From Salpingoeca rosetta (taxonomy: Eukaryota > Protista > Choanoflagellata), in the NCBI GenBank assembly GCA_033442325.1, contig JAWQFM010000003.1:2025479-2089478 (forward strand): 64,000 nucleotides of DNA, written 5' to 3'. Both the position numbers and the translations under genes were made by a program. The notes beneath the pieces were generated by a model. It searched no databases, had not been told where the DNA came from, and saw nothing but the letters and a program-made list of their open reading frames with translations. Positions 33,293 through 46,715 of this stretch are shown here, one piece after another. Every line of letters begins with the position of its first letter. The first letter of the stretch is position 1.

Positions 33293-38574
<5,282 letters not shown>

Positions 38575-38793
38575 GGCAGGAAATCGCTGTCCTTGGCTGG
38601 CGAAGAAGCAACCCCACTAACAACCACAACGGTACTTCCAACCACGCTCAAACCCGGTTCTCCTTTGTCTCCAACCAGAACCAAGGCGCTTGCTTGCCTG
38701 CCTGCTCCACCCAACACAACAAAGAAGAACAAGGATGCGCGTTGCTTGCTTGCTTTGTTTGACCGCGGGCGACACGCAGAACGAGGTTTGAAC

Positions 38794-38816
38794 TGCGCAC
38801 GACCGCGGTCTGCGCA
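38794..38816. promoter_or_regulatory. Near-perfect 23-bp dyad TGCGCA-C-GACCGCGGTC-TGCGCA in the PFKFB/OSCA bidirectional promoter
   Basis: Direct: inverted symmetry with a 1-nt bulge, between divergent start codons. Confidence 0.3.
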
Positions 38817-38874
38817 ACATTTTCAAGCAATTATCTACAAGTGTTTGCTGACTCACACTCAGCAGACGAAGAAG

Positions 38875-41800
38875 ATGCAGAGGACGAAGATGGAGATGAA
38901 GTTGGGGAGACAAGCAGCAGGGATGAGATGGGTTGTGTTGTTTGTGGCGGTGCGGTGGCGGTGTGTGGTAGTAGTGTTGGGGTGAATGGGGAGGACGTCT
39001 ATTTCGCAGACTGCGTCAACCTCTTCTCAGATGCATCCTGCAGCATGCCGCGTGGATCTGCCACGGTGAGCAGTTTGTGTGCGGACGTGTGTGTTGTGCT
39101 CGCAGCGTGTGCTCACACATGTAGTGATTGGTGCTTGCAGCGTGGGTGTGCAGCTTCGTTTGGTTGTCTCATGTCAGGTGTTTGTGTGACACAACGTGTA
39201 CTTGTGTGACGATCATGTGCTTGCACTGTGGCTGCGTGCATACATGTTGTTGGTGTCGTCGTCACTGTTGCAGCTTGGAAGACTGCCGCAAACCCGCTAT
39301 TGTCTGCGATCCACCCAAACCTGCGCAGCAGCCCCCGATTTCCAGGTGCGCGTGGGTAAATTGCGCTCGTACCTGTGCCTGTGCTTGTGCTTGCCCTCTT
39401 TCTGCTTGACATTGGCATTCTTGTGGTTGCCAGTCGTATGTGATGTGGCAACGAACGGGTGGATGTGCAAGAAGACACTGCACAGGTTCTAATGCAACAC
39501 TTGGATCTCTGCGTGCAACAGGAAGCGTATTCCTTTGACTGCCAGAAAGACAACAGCTCCAGCATCAAGATATGGACACGCACCACACACTGTTCCCCAG
39601 ATACGCCAAACTTTAACGTGACAGGTGCGCTTCGAGGCGTGCATCTTGGGGATGGGTGTGCGAGTGAGTGAGTGAGTGAGTGAGTGAGTGAGTGAGTGAG
39701 TGAGTGAGTGAGTGAGTGAGTGAGTGAGTGAGTGAGTGAGTGAGTGAGTGAGTGAGTGAGTGAGTGAGTGAGTGAGTGAGTGAGTGAGTGAGTGAGCCCG
39801 TGTGCGTCATCTGTACGATCTCTCTGTGTCTGTTTGTGTGCATGTGTTCCAAACGTTTTGCTCTCATCAAGTCCTATATGTTGTCACCCCACCCCACCCA
39901 ATCCTTTGTGCGATCGCTGTCATTGACATGCTTGCGGCATTCCAACGCCTGCAGTGCGCGCGGGCGAGTGCGTGTTCGCCTTTACCGACACGCGGCCGCC
40001 AACGGGCCCCGTGTATGTGCGCCTGGAGTGCGACGTCGAAGTGCGCGAGAGTGAGACGCGGTCGTTCCTGGTGTCCTTTGGCATCAACGCCGTGCTCGCC
40101 GTGCTGCTGCTCACCCTCTTCTGCTGCCTTCGCCACCGCCTGCCGCACTTGTACGAGACGCGCGTCGAGGAAATAGATGACATCGGAAACCTCGCCCCCG
40201 TGAGTACTGGATCTTGCCGCGGTGTGTCGTGTGTCGTGTGTCGTGTGTGTCGTGTATCGTGTGTCGTGTGTGTGTGTGTCGTGTGTGCGTGTGTTGTGTG
40301 TCGTGTGTACTTATGCGTGTGCGCGTGTGCGTATACTTATGTGTGTGCGTGTGCGTATACTTATGTGTGTGCATGTGCTTGCGTCCATGTCCTGCACTGT
40401 CGTTGCCTGCTTTATGTGTGTTGTGTGTTTTTTCTACTGGAGTTGGTGCCCTTTGCCTTTCTCACTTGGCCCACTTCTCGTCTCGCTGTCATGATCAGAA
40501 CAACCCACCACAGCCGGGCTACTTTGGCTGGCTCACCACCTCCTTCCGTCTCACGGATCAGCAGGTGAGCACGATCAACATGGGGTAGCCATTCGCATGT
40601 GTTCATGTGTGTACGTGTATGTGTTTGTGTGAGAGCATGTGTGCTTGTTGCTTCAATCGATTACATGTTACATTACACACACACACACACACACATACGC
40701 ACATACGCATACACACATACACACACATACGCACGCACTCTCACTCCCACTCTCACGCGTGTGCACATGCCTGTGCAGATGTTTGAGCAGTGCGGGCTGG
40801 ACGGGCTGATGTACACACTTCTCTTCCGCACGCTCCTCAAGGCGTTTGCCGCGTGCTTCGTGCTCACTGCCATCATCATATTGCCCGTCAACGCGCACGG
40901 CGGACTTGGCCTCACTGGTGTTGATGGCCTGTCCATCGCCAACGTGTCAGACGGCAACCAGAGCCTCAATGCGCACCTCATCCTCACGGTCGTGTACAGC
41001 GTCATCATCATGTATGCGCTCCGACACTCGTACAGGAAGGTATCGTGCAACCGTTCAGTTGCTGCTGGCGGGTGACTCTGTGAGTGAGTGAGAGCATGTG
41101 TGTTTGTGGTTGTGTGCGTATGTGTGTGTTTGTGGTTGAGTGTATGTGTTGATATGTGCGCGCGTGTGTCGGTATGCGCGCGTAAGTGTGCGTGTGGTAG
41201 AGTTGGCTTGTGCACACGCACCCTCTTGTGGCCTCCCTCACGCCACCATCACGCCACGACGACCAGTACACCAAGTTCCGCTACCGCTACCTCGCCACAG
41301 CGCACGCCAACAACTACGCTGTTCTCGTGCGCGACATTCCGCCCGATGTTCCCACAGATGCAGCCGTTCTCGACTACTTCAGGTGATGACCCACAGCTGC
41401 ATGGGGATGCTGTGGCCGTGGTGGTGGTGGTGGTAGTGGTGGTGTTGGTGGTGTTGGTGGTCGTGGTGTGTGTGTGTGCGTGCGTGTGTGTGTGCGTGTG
41501 TGTGCGTGTGCGTACGTGTGTATGTGTGTATCGTAGTACTAGCGTTTGGCGTGCGCTTGCTCTCGTTCACACCACGGTGGCTTGTGCTTGTGTTTGTGCA
41601 TTCTGTGGTGCGCCTCTGCTTTGGTGCTGGGCAGATCAATGCACGAGGGAGCCGAGCAGGTGACGCGGTTTGTGGACGTGAAGGACCTCCCAGCCATCAC
41701 AAAGAAGCGAAAGCAGGTGCGCTACGCGTGCATGTCTGCAACGCGCCATTGTACACATGAGACAGGTGTACTAGTTTTGTGCACACGTGGAGACATGCAC

Positions 41801-43299
41801 ATGCATGATGTAACACTCCCGAAACACTCACCCACTTACACCCGCTCACTCACACATGTGCACACACACGCACACTCACCCACTTACACCCACTCACTCA
41901 CACATATGCACACACACGCACACTCACCCACACACCTACTTGCACTCATGCAGGCGCGAAAGCAGCTTGAGCGGGCGCTGCATAAGCAGGAGCAGGGCGG
42001 GGAGGCGACGATGCGGCGTGGCGGGTGTCTCGGCTGCGGTGGTGACGTTGTCGATGCAGTTCACCACTGGCAGACGGAACTCAACACGCTCAACGACACG
42101 GTAAGTGACTGCTGCTCGCAAACACCTCCCTGATCCACCCGGTTCAACGTCACCACCGCCTCCTATCTCACCATCCCATATGCCATCATCACCATCACCA
42201 CCACCACCACCACCACCACCACCACCACGTGGCAGTATGCGCGGCGGCTGCGCGAGGTAACGGAATCTCCGTCCTATCTTCCGAGCGCAATCGTCACGTT
42301 CAAGACTGTCAAGGACGCCACGATTGCATCACAGGTGCGCCACTCGCGCGTGCCGTTTACCTGGACGATTGATCTGGCGGCAGAGGCCCGCGACCTGCTG
42401 TGGTCGAACCTGGCACTGCCCCACACGGCCCGTCTCTCCCGCTCCGTCGCAGTCACCATCGTCACCATCATTCTCGTGCGTCTATTGGAAGAGGAGGGGA
42501 AGAGGGGAGGGGCGTTATGTGTATGTGTGCGTGTGTATGTGTGCGTGTGTATGTGTGCGTGTGTGTTTGTGTGTGCGTGTGTGGGTGTTTGCGTCTGGCT
42601 ATGTGTGTTTGTTGTGTTGTGCTTTGTTTTGCGTTTGCATGTTGTGTTGGCGGGTGCGTGCATGTATGTCGACTTCATGCGAAAACGAGCTCACTGCCAA
42701 GGTGGTGGGTGCTGCTGCTGTGCGGATTGCGAATGCTCACTTGTGCTGCACGTACCCTGCGGCTTGGACATGCACACCAGATGATTGTGTGGACCATCCC
42801 AGTGTCGTTTGTCATTTCTCTCTTCTCGCTGCAGTCGCTGTCGCGTGTCATTCCCCAGCTGAAAACGTGTGTCCAGTTGTCACACACGAAGGGTGTTTTG
42901 CAATTGCACCCGGCTTGCAATCAATTTGCACCCGCTCAAACGCAAACACATTTTTACCGCACAAGCACACACAAGCACACACACACACAGACATATGTAC
43001 ACAGCAGCTATTTCAACACCCTCATGTTCACTGCTTGCTTGCGCTGCCGTGGTCCTTCCCACCTCCCGTTGCTTCTGCTCGTGTCAACACAGCTACGTTG
43101 CCAACAGCTCTGTCATTGGCGGGTTTGTCGAGGGCTTCCTTGCCTCTATCATCCTGCTCATCATCATGGCGCTGATCCCGTCCGTTATGCGCTGGCTGTC
43201 GCATCTGGAGGGCCACCCGACAGAGAGCTGCGTTGGCCGCGCCAGCACCGTCAAGCTCTTCTGGTTCCAGGTGTGCTTGCGGTAGTGGCAGTAGTCGTA

Positions 43300-43381
<82 letters not shown>

Positions 43382-43808
43382 TGTGTGGGTGTGTGTGTGG
43401 GTGTGTGTGTGTGTGTGTGGGTGTGTGTGTGGGTGTGTGTGTGTGTGGACATGTGTGCGGACGTGTGTGCGTGGATGTGTGTGTACGGTTGTGAGTTGTG
43501 TGGTGTCAGCGTTTGTACAAGCGTCAGTTTTGCTTGTGCTGCATTGAACCTGCCAGCAACGCCAACGGCTCTTCTGTCTGTCTCTCTTTGTTTCTGCACC
43601 TCTTGTTTCACATTCACCTCTACCCGTGCACACGATGCTCTGTCCTTTCAGGTCGTGAACATCTTCCTTGTGTCTCTCGTCTTCGGCAGGTGCGCGCGCG
43701 CGTGTGTGTGCGATTTATTGTGTGCAAGCTGGTCGATCGTCATCCTCCCACTTCAATTGCTGTTGCGTTGTATTCAGCGCAGCTGACCAGTGGCACACAC
43801 ACACACAC

Positions 43809-43844
<36 letters not shown>

Positions 43845-44009
43845 GCACACGCACGCACACATGCAGCGTGCTGCCGATTCTTGATGACCTTCGGGACAAC
43901 CCTGGGCAGCTGATTGATCTGCTTGGCGGCAGCGTGCCACGCACGGGCCTCTTCTTCACCTCGTTCGTCATGGTCAGGGGTGAGTCACGCCTCGAGTGTT
44001 GGCGCTTCC

Positions 44010-44047
<38 letters not shown>

Positions 44048-46312
44048 GGACACGAGTGTGCGGAACGTTGTTTGCAGCAACGCAGTCACGGCCACATGGT
44101 TTGTGCGTGGAGCACACCCATACCTCCATATCCACACACATACACACGCAAACACGCATCAAGTACACTTCTTTGCTTTATACGCATATATACCCCCTTC
44201 TTCTTCTCAAGTACACGCACGCACGCTCACGCACGACGCACGCACGCTTACGCACGACCCACCACTGGCACCCTCTCGTGCACCTCCACCCAGCGTGTGT
44301 TGGGTATCCTGTGCAGCTGCTGCGGGTGGCGGAAGCGCTCGTGTCGTTTTTCTCGTATGTCTTCTTCTCCGCAACGCCCGCAGAACGCAACGAGGCGTTC
44401 AAGGCGATCCACTTTGACATCCCAGCGTACATCTCAGGTGTGGCTGTGTGCATGTATGATCCACGTGCACATGTTGGTGGAAGCGTGCACCTGTTCTCAC
44501 CACCACTCATCATACAGGCCACGTGCACACATGTCACTCAAGCACACGCTCATTCACACATTTACACGATGCCTGTGTATCTCTTCACACTCACTTCTCC
44601 ACACACACACACACACTGCAGCGGATATGCTTGTGATTTTGGTTGGCATGACGTTCAGCAACGTCAACCCCATTATCGTGCCGTTCTTCCTGCTGTATCT
44701 TGCACTCGGTTACATCACCAACCGCTACCTCCTCTTCTTCGTGTACAAGCAGGTAACAGCTCATTGCTCGCGTAATGTAGAGGAGGGGGGGGAGGGATGG
44801 GGTTAGGTGGTATGGGCTTTGGCCACGTACGTGTATGCGTGCGTGATGCTGTCACGTAGGCAGTGCAACTCCTCATCATTTATATGACTCGCTTTCACAC
44901 TCACATTCCTTTCTTCACTCTGTTACACACACACACACACACACGCACACACACACACACACACACACGCACACTTGTAGCGATATGACAGTGGCGGGCA
45001 GCTGTGGCCGCTGATCTTCAACCAGCTGATGATGTGTTTGATCATCTCCCAAATCGCTGTTGCAGCCGTGCTCGCCGTCAAGACAATGATCGTCCAAGTG
45101 CGTGTGTGCCTGTTTGATTGATGTAATTGTTCATATGTGTGTGTACATGTATGTGTGTGTACATGTATGTGTGTGTACATGTATGTGTGTATACTTGTAT
45201 GTGTACATGTGTGTGTGTGTTCTTTCGTCCAGAGACAGGGCACTGGCCACCATATCACCCAAACGTTGTTTCTGATTTCTTTGCCTTTGCTCACATCTGG
45301 TTGCGTTGCGTGTTTGGTTGTGGGCCTCCCTTGTGCAGGCGTGCTTGCTGCTGGTGCTCGTTATGGCCACTGGTGTGTTCTGGTACTACATGCACACTGT
45401 AAGTTGAGCATGCGCACGCATTTGTGCATGTGTTGTGCATGTGTGTATTTGAGCATGCGTGTAGTTGAGCATGTATTTGTGCGTGCTTGTGTTTGAGCGC
45501 GTGTTATTGTGCGTGTGCACCTTAAGCGCCTCTGCGTGCTTGTGTATTTCAGTTGCAATTCTTTCCTCCCTCCTCTTCTTCTAATCTACACACGCACGCT
45601 TGTTGTTGTTGCTCTTGACTTGCTTCCGCACTGCGGTGTTCAACAGGGGCGCGGCCAGGTTGGCAATGACCTTGCGCTGGAAGTGGCCGTGAGCGTGGAC
45701 TCTCCAATGCCTTCAGACTTGGCCCGCACATACAAGCAGGTACGAGGTGTCTTGCTTGGTGGCTTGGTGCGCTCACATGTTACGCACGTGAGACGTGCGT
45801 GTTCGCTGCGTTTTGTGTACCGCTTCTTTTGAGCGCTTTCTCTTGTCTATCCGCTTGTTGTGCCTCCCTCTGCCTCCCTCCTCGTTCTTCTCCTTCTCCT
45901 CCTTTTGTCTCCGCTTCGCCTCTTCCTCCTCACGTGCGCTTCTGTGCATGGTTGTGTCTCTCTGTTGCCTGTTGTGCTGCAGCCTGAGCTGAAGGAGGAA
46001 GTGGCCATGAAGCCTCGGCACGGGCCAGCGCGAGCCGCCAAAGTGCACCCGACAACCACGGCGCACGCGAGACCGAAGGTAAGGCCTTGCAAGCGTGTGT
46101 GCGTGTCTGGTTGCACGCGTGCTGCGTTTTGTTTTGTTTTGGGTGTGGGCAGGCAGGCATGCTTGCTTGTTTGGTCTCAACATCTCCTCATTTCATCATG
46201 AACAACACACACACAATTTACACACACAATGTACACACACACACACACACACAATGTTCACACACAATGTTCACACACAATGTACACACCCAACGTCGAC
46301 ACACACAATGTA

Positions 46313-46378
<66 letters not shown>

Positions 46379-46389
46379 GCACACACAAT

Positions 46390-46455
<66 letters not shown>

Positions 46456-46474
46456 ACACACACACCCACCCATC

Positions 46475-46550
<76 letters not shown>

Positions 46551-46715
46551 ATGTACGCGCTTCAGAAGCAAGCAACGGGTCGGAAAGGTGGAGAGGCATC
46601 CCCGTTGCTGCCAACAAGAGCGACACCCGATTCTCGGCACCGCACGGGCTCAGACTACCTCCTGTACACCACAAACAACTCGGACAACGCAGCATCCGAG
46701 GCGCAGGAAGCCTGA
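38875..46715 (+). CDS. TMEM63: OSCA/TMEM63 (CSC1/ERD4-like) mechanosensitive Ca2+-permeable channel with an N-terminal Cys-rich extension
   Basis: TM0 SFLVSFGINAVLAVLLLTLFCCLRHRLPHLY; GYFGWL; CGLDGLMY..F; IILPVN; LSIANV; NNYAVLVRDIP; VDAVHHW; SAIVTF; AAEARDLLWSNL; IVWTIPVSFV; KLFWFQVVNIFLV; LGGSVPRTGLFFTSFV; YPVQLLR; MTFSNVNPII; RYLLFFVY..YDSGGQLWP. Stop at 46713-46715. The 5' exon needs a 1-nt correction near 38951. The symbol indicates family only. Confidence 0.9.
39662..39796. repeat. (GTGA)n microsatellite (~33 units) in OSCA intron 3
   Basis: Direct: GAGTGAGTGAGT... Confidence 0.92.
41826..41930. repeat. ~48-bp tandem minisatellite (about 2 copies) in an OSCA intron
   Basis: ACTCACCCACTTACACCCRCTCACTCACACATRTGCACACACACGCAC is repeated. 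Confidence 0.7.

What the first reader, a model, noticed from the sequence alone, without database searches (positions are those of the whole stretch)
38875..40140. OSCA/TMEM63 channel with a signal peptide and a ~110-aa, 8-cysteine extracellular domain before TM0
Seen: four phase-compatible exons (to ~39065, ~39274-39345, ~39522-39624, from ~39955) encode EDVYFADCVNLFSDASCSMPRGSAT-LGRLPQTRYCLRSTQTCAAAPDFQ-EAYSFDCQKDNSSSIKIWTRTTHCSPDTPNFNVT-VRAGECVFAFTDTRPPTGPVYVRLECDVEVRESETRS. This has 8 Cys and N-glycosylation sequons (NSS, NVT) and runs straight into TM0. Known: OSCA/TMEM63 N-termini face the outside/lumen and are normally short; these channels are considered force-from-lipid sensors. Inference: a disulfide-bonded ectodomain could tether the channel to extracellular matrix or gate it by ligand, a variant I do not know to be described.
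Basis: partly seen in the sequence, partly recalled or inferred. Interest (0 to 1): 0.75.

Follow-up and report, generated by a model that had tools for sequence, protein, structure and literature searches.

The report
Choanoflagellate OSCA channel with cysteine-rich ectodomain
In the choanoflagellate Salpingoeca rosetta, one spliced mRNA really does encode a stretch-activated-type OSCA/TMEM63 channel that carries a signal peptide and a conserved outside-facing domain of about 105-110 residues with eight cysteines joined directly to its first membrane helix, a layout I found described nowhere and whose function is still unknown.

Summary
A 2,915-nt contig runs on from them by the length of the whole channel message. 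The gene is already annotated as hypothetical protein PTSG_09322 of Salpingoeca rosetta (891 aa, 21 exons, 38928-46715). That model starts too late. The RNA carries an extra G behind 38951, which puts ATG 38875 in frame and gives a classical signal peptide.

A second choanoflagellate with 36% GC DNA has an ortholog that keeps:
- the signal peptide;
- all eight cysteines;
- both N-glycosylation sequons;
- the three intron positions;
- a short conserved linker to TM0.

The ectodomain is constrained about as strongly as the membrane part (pN 0.32 against 0.27; pS saturated). Solved plant OSCAs have 2-4 residues before TM0.

The fold is unresolved: AlphaFold pLDDT is below 50. The only sequence lead is a below-threshold match to PF11912/DUF3430, the Dictyostelium bacteriolytic "Bad" family (secreted, at least 8 cysteines).

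Gating by a tether or ligand is plausible because TM0 couples to TM6, but it is untested. I rate it a new variant of a known kind. The scan had not noted it before.

The parts
38847..38874 (+). 5' UTR. Transcript contigs begin at about 38847-38850, and 38875 is the first ATG after that.
   Evidence: X6 record 9 starts at 38847, X4 record 6 at 38850
38875..38981 (+). Signal-peptide coding part of exon 1. In the RNA form (extra G behind 38951) it reads as a basic n-region, a 13-residue hydrophobic core (WVVLFVAVAVAVC) and a small-residue c-region ending about 3-6 residues before YFADC. As assembled, this frame is broken; the annotated model starts at ATG 38928.
   Evidence: (Kyte-Doolittle peak 3.4 at residues 20-30); the ortholog P0001 has an equivalent signal peptide
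38982..39065 (+). Exon 1, mature part of the ectodomain (Cys 1 and 2; the FxxxxC motif FSDASC)
39274..39345 (+). Exon 2 of the ectodomain (Cys 3 and 4)
   Evidence: RNA joints
39522..39624 (+). Exon 3 of the ectodomain (Cys 5 and 6; sequons NSS and NVT)
   Evidence: RNA joints and the loose end into exon 4
39955..40064 (+). Exon 4, last part of the ectodomain (Cys 7 and 8; the YxxxxC motif YVRLEC) and the conserved 11-residue linker DVEVRESETRS
40065..40130 (+). TM0 (F142-L163 of PTSG_09322), followed by the basic cytosolic flank RHRLPHLYETR up to the exon end at 40199
   Evidence: Pfam RSN1_TM starts here; AlphaFold helix 138-166; aligns to TM0 of OSCA3.1 and OSCA2.2
40499..46715 (+). Exons 5-21: the rest of the channel (remainder of RSN1_TM, PHM7_cyt cytosolic domain, RSN1_7TM pore region, C-terminal tail, stop codon)
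   Evidence: all introns GT-AG; 2,676 nt = 891 codons + stop

Best explanation
Shown.
- The gene (PTSG_09322 of Salpingoeca rosetta) makes one mRNA for an OSCA/TMEM63-family channel.
- Its N-terminus has a cleavable-type signal peptide and then a domain of about 105-110 residues.
- That domain has eight conserved cysteines and two conserved N-glycosylation sequons. It is predicted to be mostly beta.
- A short conserved linker joins it directly to TM0.
- A second choanoflagellate keeps the same build under purifying selection.

Follows from established topology.
- OSCA/TMEM63 N-termini are extracellular or lumenal.
- A large N-terminal domain needs a signal peptide to be translocated.
- The domain therefore sits on the outer (or vacuole-lumen) face, disulfide-bonded and glycosylated, on top of the peripheral helix TM0.

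Inferred.
- The domain is a binding module. It possibly descends from the secreted DUF3430/Bad-type cysteine-rich domains.
- It adds an external input (matrix, theca, glycan or bacterial surface) to a core that is otherwise gated by membrane tension.
- It would act through TM0, whose coupling to TM6 is known to set the open probability of TMEM63 channels.
For: One transcript:
- Splice joints and the loose end into exon 4 appear in two raw stranded RNA-seq runs and two contig sets. A 2,915-nt contig continues through the message.

Channel identity:
- PF13967 scores 3.4e-34, PF14703 1.7e-28 and PF02714 1.5e-68, in the family order.
- The match to solved OSCA1.2 is 2.7e-80. OSCA3.1 aligns from its residue 3.

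Signal peptide:
- It is seen in the RNA-form N-terminus and in the ortholog.

Conservation:
- Over the first 175 residues, identity is 54%.
- All 8 Cys, N81, N102 and the ESET linker are invariant.
- Introns fall after SAT, DFQ and NV(T/S) in both species, although GC is 36% against about 55%.
- pN is 0.315 in the ectodomain and 0.271 in the TM0-to-cytosolic part. pS is about 0.81-0.84, i.e. saturated.

Binding-module lead:
- PF11912 is the only Pfam hit for both orthologs.
- The register is the same in both, with or without the signal peptide. Scores are 22.8, 17.5, 19.6 and 17.9 bits.
- That family has a signal peptide, at least 8 Cys and Y/FxxxxC motifs. Phytophthora look-alikes serve as ectodomains of TM-kinase proteins (PMC7886984).

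Route to the gate:
- TM0-TM6 coupling controls TMEM63C/B activity (PMC10636204).
Against: - No functional data exist.
- The fold is unresolved. AlphaFold gives pLDDT 41.8 for the domain alone and below 50 for residues 1-138 in the full-length model. The best structural match is Z 4.1.
- The PF11912 match is below Pfam's cut-off of 28.6 bits and covers only profile positions about 11-129 of 206. Cysteine-rich composition can inflate such scores.
- The domain was found in only two related species. It may be a lineage-specific accessory without a gating role.
- The assembly lacks the G that makes the long signal peptide. I could not lay DNA reads to decide whether that is an assembly error.
Confidence: 0.55

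Rival explanations
1. The ectodomain is a biogenesis or protection accessory and not a sensor. It would be a glycosylated, disulfide-locked cap that helps folding, sorting or protease resistance. One setting would be a food-vacuole or lysosomal membrane, where some animal TMEM63 proteins reside. Gating would remain purely force-from-lipid.
For: The core is a complete OSCA channel with no unusual changes detected. The title of a 2026 review places TMEM63/OSCA channels in lysosomes as well as at the plasma membrane. The two conserved sequons fit a lumenal glycan shield. The narrow taxonomic spread fits a lineage-specific accessory.
Against: A mere shield would not need eight invariant cysteines, a conserved short linker to TM0, or constraint equal to that on the membrane part. 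Other family members fold and traffic without such a domain.
Confidence: 0.27
2. The domain is a true DUF3430/Bad-type antibacterial domain displayed on the membrane. It would face ingested or captured bacteria and act as an effector or a prey-contact sensor, with the channel serving as anchor or reporter.
For: PF11912 is the only Pfam hit for both orthologs, in a consistent register. BadA of that family contributes to lysis and killing of Klebsiella in Dictyostelium (PMC7886984). S. rosetta eats bacteria (own knowledge).
Against: The scores are below the curated cut-off and only about 60% of the profile is covered. PF11912 was not detected anywhere in the six-frame S. rosetta genome, but that search was uninformative because nothing rang in the controls either. 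Purified BadA alone did not lyse bacteria. No structural support exists.
Confidence: 0.12
3. The upstream exons are a separate gene, a UTR or an annotation artefact, and the channel protein starts at or after TM0.
For: In the assembly, the ATG 38875 frame is interrupted. Read laying could not be run across exon 4 because of the microsatellite at 39662-39796.
Against: Spliced reads link exons 1-2-3. Loose ends in all four runs continue into the first 30 letters of exon 4. A 2,915-nt contig spans the rest. The reading frame is open from the ectodomain through the whole channel. The ortholog has the same fusion on genomic DNA of another species.
Confidence: 0.03

Closest known systems
Plant OSCA channels (OSCA1.1, OSCA1.2, OSCA3.1/ERD4, OSCA2.2/HYP1) and animal TMEM63A/B/C
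   Same: Same three Pfam domains in the same order. Full-length sequence matches to solved structures range from E 2.7e-80 (OSCA1.2) to about 1e-27 (TMEM63A). TM0 has an outside N-terminus (PMC6235563, PMC10636204).
   Different: Plant OSCAs have 2-4 residues before TM0. The OSCA1.2 structure paper saw no structured extracellular domains. Here 138 residues (about 155 in the RNA form) precede TM0 and include a signal peptide and an 8-Cys domain. Other protist homologs sampled have 35-65 residues without cysteine patterns.
DUF3430 / CfaA_B_C (PF11912), the Dictyostelium Bad (bacteriolytic) family
   Same: A signal peptide followed by a domain with at least eight cysteines, many aromatics and Y/FxxxxC motifs (here FSDASC and YVRLEC, both kept in the ortholog). 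It is the only Pfam family hit by both orthologs, E 1e-4 to 5e-3 (description from PMC7886984).
   Different: Scores are below the curated cut-off. Only the first 60% or so of the 206-position profile is matched. Bad proteins are soluble and secreted or lysosomal, not fused to a channel. I do not file the domain as a member.
Phytophthora proteins with a DUF3430-like Cys/aromatic domain + TM + cytosolic kinase (cited in PMC7886984)
   Same: The same logic of use: signal peptide, a Cys-rich aromatic domain outside, then a membrane span feeding a signalling module.
   Different: The output module is a kinase on a single-pass protein, not an 11-TM channel. I had no sequences to compare; this is known to me only from the paper's text.
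MiAMP1 (Macadamia antimicrobial peptide; Greek-key beta-barrel of the beta-gamma-crystallin type)
   Same: A small disulfide-rich all-beta domain with Y/W/FxxxxC motifs. The DUF3430 paper proposes it as a structural model for half of that domain. Both of my low-confidence models are mostly beta.
   Different: No sequence match to any PDB chain, even at E 10. No internal duplication was detected. The fold search gave no specific hit.

Membership tests
OSCA/TMEM63 (CSC1-like) channels | RSN1_TM (PF13967), PHM7_cyt (PF14703) and RSN1_7TM (PF02714) in this order, above Pfam cut-offs | tested here: met
   118.2, 100.5 and 231.6 bits at residues 141-289, 312-468 and 479-750 of P0005.
OSCA/TMEM63 (CSC1-like) channels | End-to-end homology with solved members, including the extra N-terminal helix TM0 | tested here: met
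   OSCA3.1 residues 3-678 align to 139-795 (about 1e-65); OSCA1.2 scores 2.7e-80.: the AlphaFold model has helix 138-166 and the membrane core at pLDDT 70-90.
OSCA/TMEM63 (CSC1-like) channels | N-terminus outside and C-terminus inside | not testable with these tools
   Inferred from the solved relatives (PMC6235563, PMC10636204), the signal peptide, the conserved sequons and the basic residues after TM0.
OSCA/TMEM63 (CSC1-like) channels | Mechanically or osmotically activated cation conductance | not testable with these tools
   Needs electrophysiology.
DUF3430 / CfaA_B_C (PF11912) | Score at or above Pfam's gathering cut-off (28.6 bits) over the domain | tested here: not met
   22.8 and 19.6 bits (P0001), 17.5 and 17.9 bits (P0005). 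Profile positions about 11-129 of 206 only.
DUF3430 / CfaA_B_C (PF11912) | Preceded by a signal peptide | tested here: met
   the family description is in PMC7886984.
DUF3430 / CfaA_B_C (PF11912) | At least eight conserved cysteines and several Y/FxxxxC motifs | tested here: inconclusive
   Eight invariant Cys. Two exact motifs are conserved in both species, plus YxxxC and WxxxxxC variants. I could not align them to the family's own columns.
DUF3430 / CfaA_B_C (PF11912) | Bacteriolytic or bacteria-directed activity | not testable with these tools
   Needs an assay.
MiAMP1 / beta-gamma-crystallin-type Greek-key barrel | [quoted passage not shown] | tested here: inconclusive
   The models are too poor (pLDDT 41.8). 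Best Z is 4.1, to generic small barrels. No internal repeat was found.

The most novel reading that the evidence does not exclude
The ectodomain is a Bad/DUF3430-related module that binds a bacterial or matrix surface. Pulling or ligand binding on it would move TM0 and open the pore. This OSCA channel would then be a tethered, contact-gated sensor of prey, theca or colony matrix in the closest relatives of animals. It would be the first natural OSCA/TMEM63 gated from outside and not only by lipid tension.
Probability: 0.12. Interest if true: 0.85.

Novelty: new variant of a known kind. Interest (0 to 1): 0.5.

Why it matters
OSCA/TMEM63 channels are treated as pure force-from-lipid sensors, and the solved members show no structured outside domain. 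Here evolution has placed a folded, disulfide-rich domain directly on TM0, the peripheral helix whose coupling to TM6 tunes opening. That makes a ready-made test of whether this family can take an external (tether or ligand) input.

The organism is genetically tractable, eats bacteria, responds to bacterial cues and is a close relative of animals. Localisation and knockout phenotypes could therefore link the channel to prey capture, theca attachment or colony mechanics.

There is also a practical point. The public model PTSG_09322 probably lacks its true first 18 or so residues because of a 1-nt discrepancy at 38951. Signal-peptide predictions based on that model are unreliable.

Tried and rejected
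1. Separate upstream gene or wrong model: rejected by the RNA joints.
2. Paralogous copies of the domain in the same genome: only the gene's own four exons matched. Two weak hits on contig 14 lie in an off-frame, low-complexity reading of kinesin-like exons and are spurious.
3. Other OSCA genes in the genome: PF02714 found only this gene's exons. The six-frame search is insensitive to small exons.
4. Wider relatives of the domain:
   - The exhaustive HMMER search with exon 4 found only the ortholog and a fragment of it.
   - The word-index searches with residues 1-150 and with the two-species profile found nothing more. even missed PTSG_09322, so these blanks are weak.
   - The metagenome scan found none.
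   - ESM Atlas feature searches gave no usable hit. The Atlas structure neighbours were unrelated bacterial alpha/beta domains at TM about 0.5.
5. PDB profile search at E 10: nothing.
6. Structure: AlphaFold on the two-sequence alignment gave pLDDT 41.8. The full-length model gave pLDDT below 50 for residues 1-138. VIA-align over 48,161 chains gave best Z 4.1. The fold is left open.
7. Internal duplication of two 4-Cys halves (both start Y-x-x-D-C): hhalign probability 0.2%, rejected.
8. The heavily covered 52-57-nt stretch upstream as a spliced leader, tRNA or small RNA: no Rfam or tRNA hit. It is the sharp end of a dispersed repeat.
I laid the part beside it.
10. I sent no self-joined spliced model to any search or fold tool. 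Joined-sequence work used the database protein P0005, which equals the spliced model from 38928. The longer RNA-form N-terminus was only translated locally and was neither searched nor folded.

Full report
**What is in the sequence**

The window is intron-rich eukaryotic DNA of about 55% GC with microsatellite-filled introns.

They are phase-compatible, and the quoted peptides are exact.

At exon level, Pfam's RSN1_TM model begins at residue 36 of exon 4, and the next large exon continues it at E 1.6e-17. The cysteine-rich stretch therefore abuts TM0 directly.

I confirmed this. The database protein P0005, "hypothetical protein PTSG_09322 [Salpingoeca rosetta]" (891 aa), maps residue for residue onto 21 GT-AG exons from 38928 to 46715.

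**Is it one transcript?**

I laid 38480-39661, the part beside it.
- Two raw stranded RNA-seq runs and two sets of transcript contigs, from three studies, show both joints with many independent starts.
- All four show a loose end behind 39624 whose 30 letters are the first letters of exon 4 at 39955.
- One contig of 2,915 nt starts inside exon 1, crosses exons 2 and 3 and continues 2,655 nt. That matches the remaining coding sequence plus a 3' UTR.
- Introns have zero depth.
- Reads of this gene have the first mate on the - strand. Reads left of 38816 have it on the + strand. The upstream transcription therefore belongs to a divergent gene on the - strand, not to this one.

The "separate gene" rival is refuted at the RNA level.

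**The start of the protein**

As assembled, the ATG at 38875 opens a frame that stops at 38983-38985. The ectodomain frame has its first ATG at 38928, which is where the public model starts.

The RNA has one more G behind 38951, inside a (GTGGCG) repeat: 7 of 9 reads in X21, plus the contigs of X4 and X6.

With that G, the first ATG of the transcript (38875; contigs begin at 38847-38850) is in frame. It gives a basic n-region, a 13-residue hydrophobic core and a small-residue c-region just before YFADC. This mirrors the ortholog's N-terminus.

The hydrophobic core is too short for a membrane span. A cleavable signal peptide is what a folded domain of more than 100 residues needs to cross the membrane ahead of an N-out helix (established topogenesis, own knowledge).

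Whether the missing G is an assembly error remains open.

**Conservation**

An exhaustive HMMER search of 1.84 billion representatives with exon 4 found one full-length relative, P0001 (852 aa, from EukProt), and a fragment of it, P0002.

P0001 is 55% identical to PTSG_09322 over 860 residues. Over the first 175 residues identity is 54%. The invariant positions there include all eight cysteines, N81 and N102 of the two sequons, and the ESET linker before TM0.

A genomic contig from that species (L007, sample SRR14727191, 36% GC) shows introns at the same three places in the ectodomain, plus one extra intron before TM0.

Codon comparison gives pN 0.315 for the ectodomain and 0.271 for the TM0-to-cytosolic part, with synonymous sites saturated at pS 0.81-0.84. 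The domain is under constraint similar to that on the channel's own membrane part.

The second species may be Barroeca monosierra. The accession date and the existence of a genome project fit, but I did not verify this.

**How unusual it is in the family**

The protein has the three OSCA domains in order and matches solved OSCA1.2 at 2.7e-80.

OSCA3.1 aligns from its residue 3 and OSCA2.2 from residue 5 to residues 139 and 141 here. Those channels therefore have 2-4 residues where this one has 138, or about 155 in the RNA form.

The OSCA1.2 structure paper states that the N-terminus faces outside and that no structured extracellular domains were seen (PMC6235563). Five other homologs in hand have 0-65 residues before TM0 and no cysteine pattern. 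Literature searches found no description of an OSCA/TMEM63 ectodomain or of choanoflagellate OSCAs.

I could not survey the whole family, and the word-index searches are leaky. "Rare" is supported only by a small sample.

**What the domain is**

Pfam gives a single lead, PF11912 (CfaA_B_C, formerly DUF3430).
- P0001 scores 22.8 bits (E 1e-4) and PTSG_09322 scores 17.5 bits.
- Without the signal peptides the scores are 19.6 and 17.9 bits, in the same register.
- All scores are below the 28.6-bit cut-off, and they cover only profile positions about 11-129 of 206.

According to PMC7886984:
- The family has about 160 dictyostelid proteins, including BadA, which contributes to lysis and killing of Klebsiella.
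- Every DUF3430 domain is preceded by a signal peptide.
- The domain has at least eight conserved cysteines and Y/FxxxxC motifs.
- The authors compare it to the MiAMP1 Greek-key barrel.
- Phytophthora look-alikes are often linked to a TM segment and a cytosolic kinase.

The domain here has two such motifs conserved in both species.

Everything else was blank or uninformative:
- The PDB profile search found nothing.
- The Atlas searches gave no usable relative.
- The metagenome scan found none.
- No paralog was found in the genome.
- No internal repeat was detected.

AlphaFold gave pLDDT 41.8 for the domain alone and below 50 for residues 1-138 in the full-length model; both models are mostly beta. 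The fold search peaked at Z 4.1 on generic small barrels.

I treat DUF3430 as a lead and not as membership.

**How it most likely works**

Shown: the architecture and its conservation.

From known topology: the domain is extracellular or lumenal, glycosylated and disulfide-bonded, and sits on TM0.

Inferred: it is a binding module that feeds into gating through TM0. Cross-linking TM0 to TM6 raises TMEM63C activity, and mutations in TM0 change TMEM63B/C responses (PMC10636204). The linker here is only about 11 residues and is conserved.

The main rival is a folding, sorting or protease-shield accessory with no gating role. A displayed antibacterial Bad-type domain is a less likely variant. None of these can be separated without experiments.

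**Verdict**

The gene model is public but apparently undescribed, and its annotated start is probably wrong. I rate it a new variant of a known kind, with moderate interest (0.5).

No self-joined spliced model was sent to any search or fold tool; database protein P0005 was used instead.

Noticed in passing
window 38951 (also 38585, 38736, 39312): All RNA data carry an extra G behind 38951, inside a (GTGGCG) repeat, which the window and the public model PTSG_09322 lack. This shifts the true start codon from 38928 to 38875. Three fixed single-base differences from the assembly (C>T, T>C, and a synonymous C>G at 39312) are seen in every run.
   Followed up: partly
window 38760-38816: A 57-nt stretch between the two divergent transcript starts is 98-100% identical to at least six other places in the genome. 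In those copies it is the sharply bounded end of a longer dispersed repeat that continues rightwards into an A-rich tract. RNA depth over it is 10-30 times that of its surroundings, and the reads run off into other loci. There is no Rfam or tRNA match. One copy (G000:C6 near 377.6 kb) runs into withheld N.
   Followed up: partly
window 38480-38748, - strand: A divergently transcribed gene on the - strand has its 5' end near 38748, only about 100 nt from the channel's transcript start. A 2-kb contig continues leftwards. Its contigs end in 12 unmatched letters followed by adapter sequence. The gene was not identified.
   Followed up: no
L007:1660-1705 (second species): The ortholog has one extra intron exactly between the ectodomain (ending ..QVFE) and the SETLTF linker/TM0 exon. 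In that species the ectodomain and TM0 are on separate exons.
   Followed up: no
window 39660-39796 and most introns of the gene: The introns are packed with long microsatellites, such as (GTGA)n of about 135 nt and (GT)n/(CA)n. These blocked read laying across exon 3-4 and create many spurious long ORFs.
   Followed up: no
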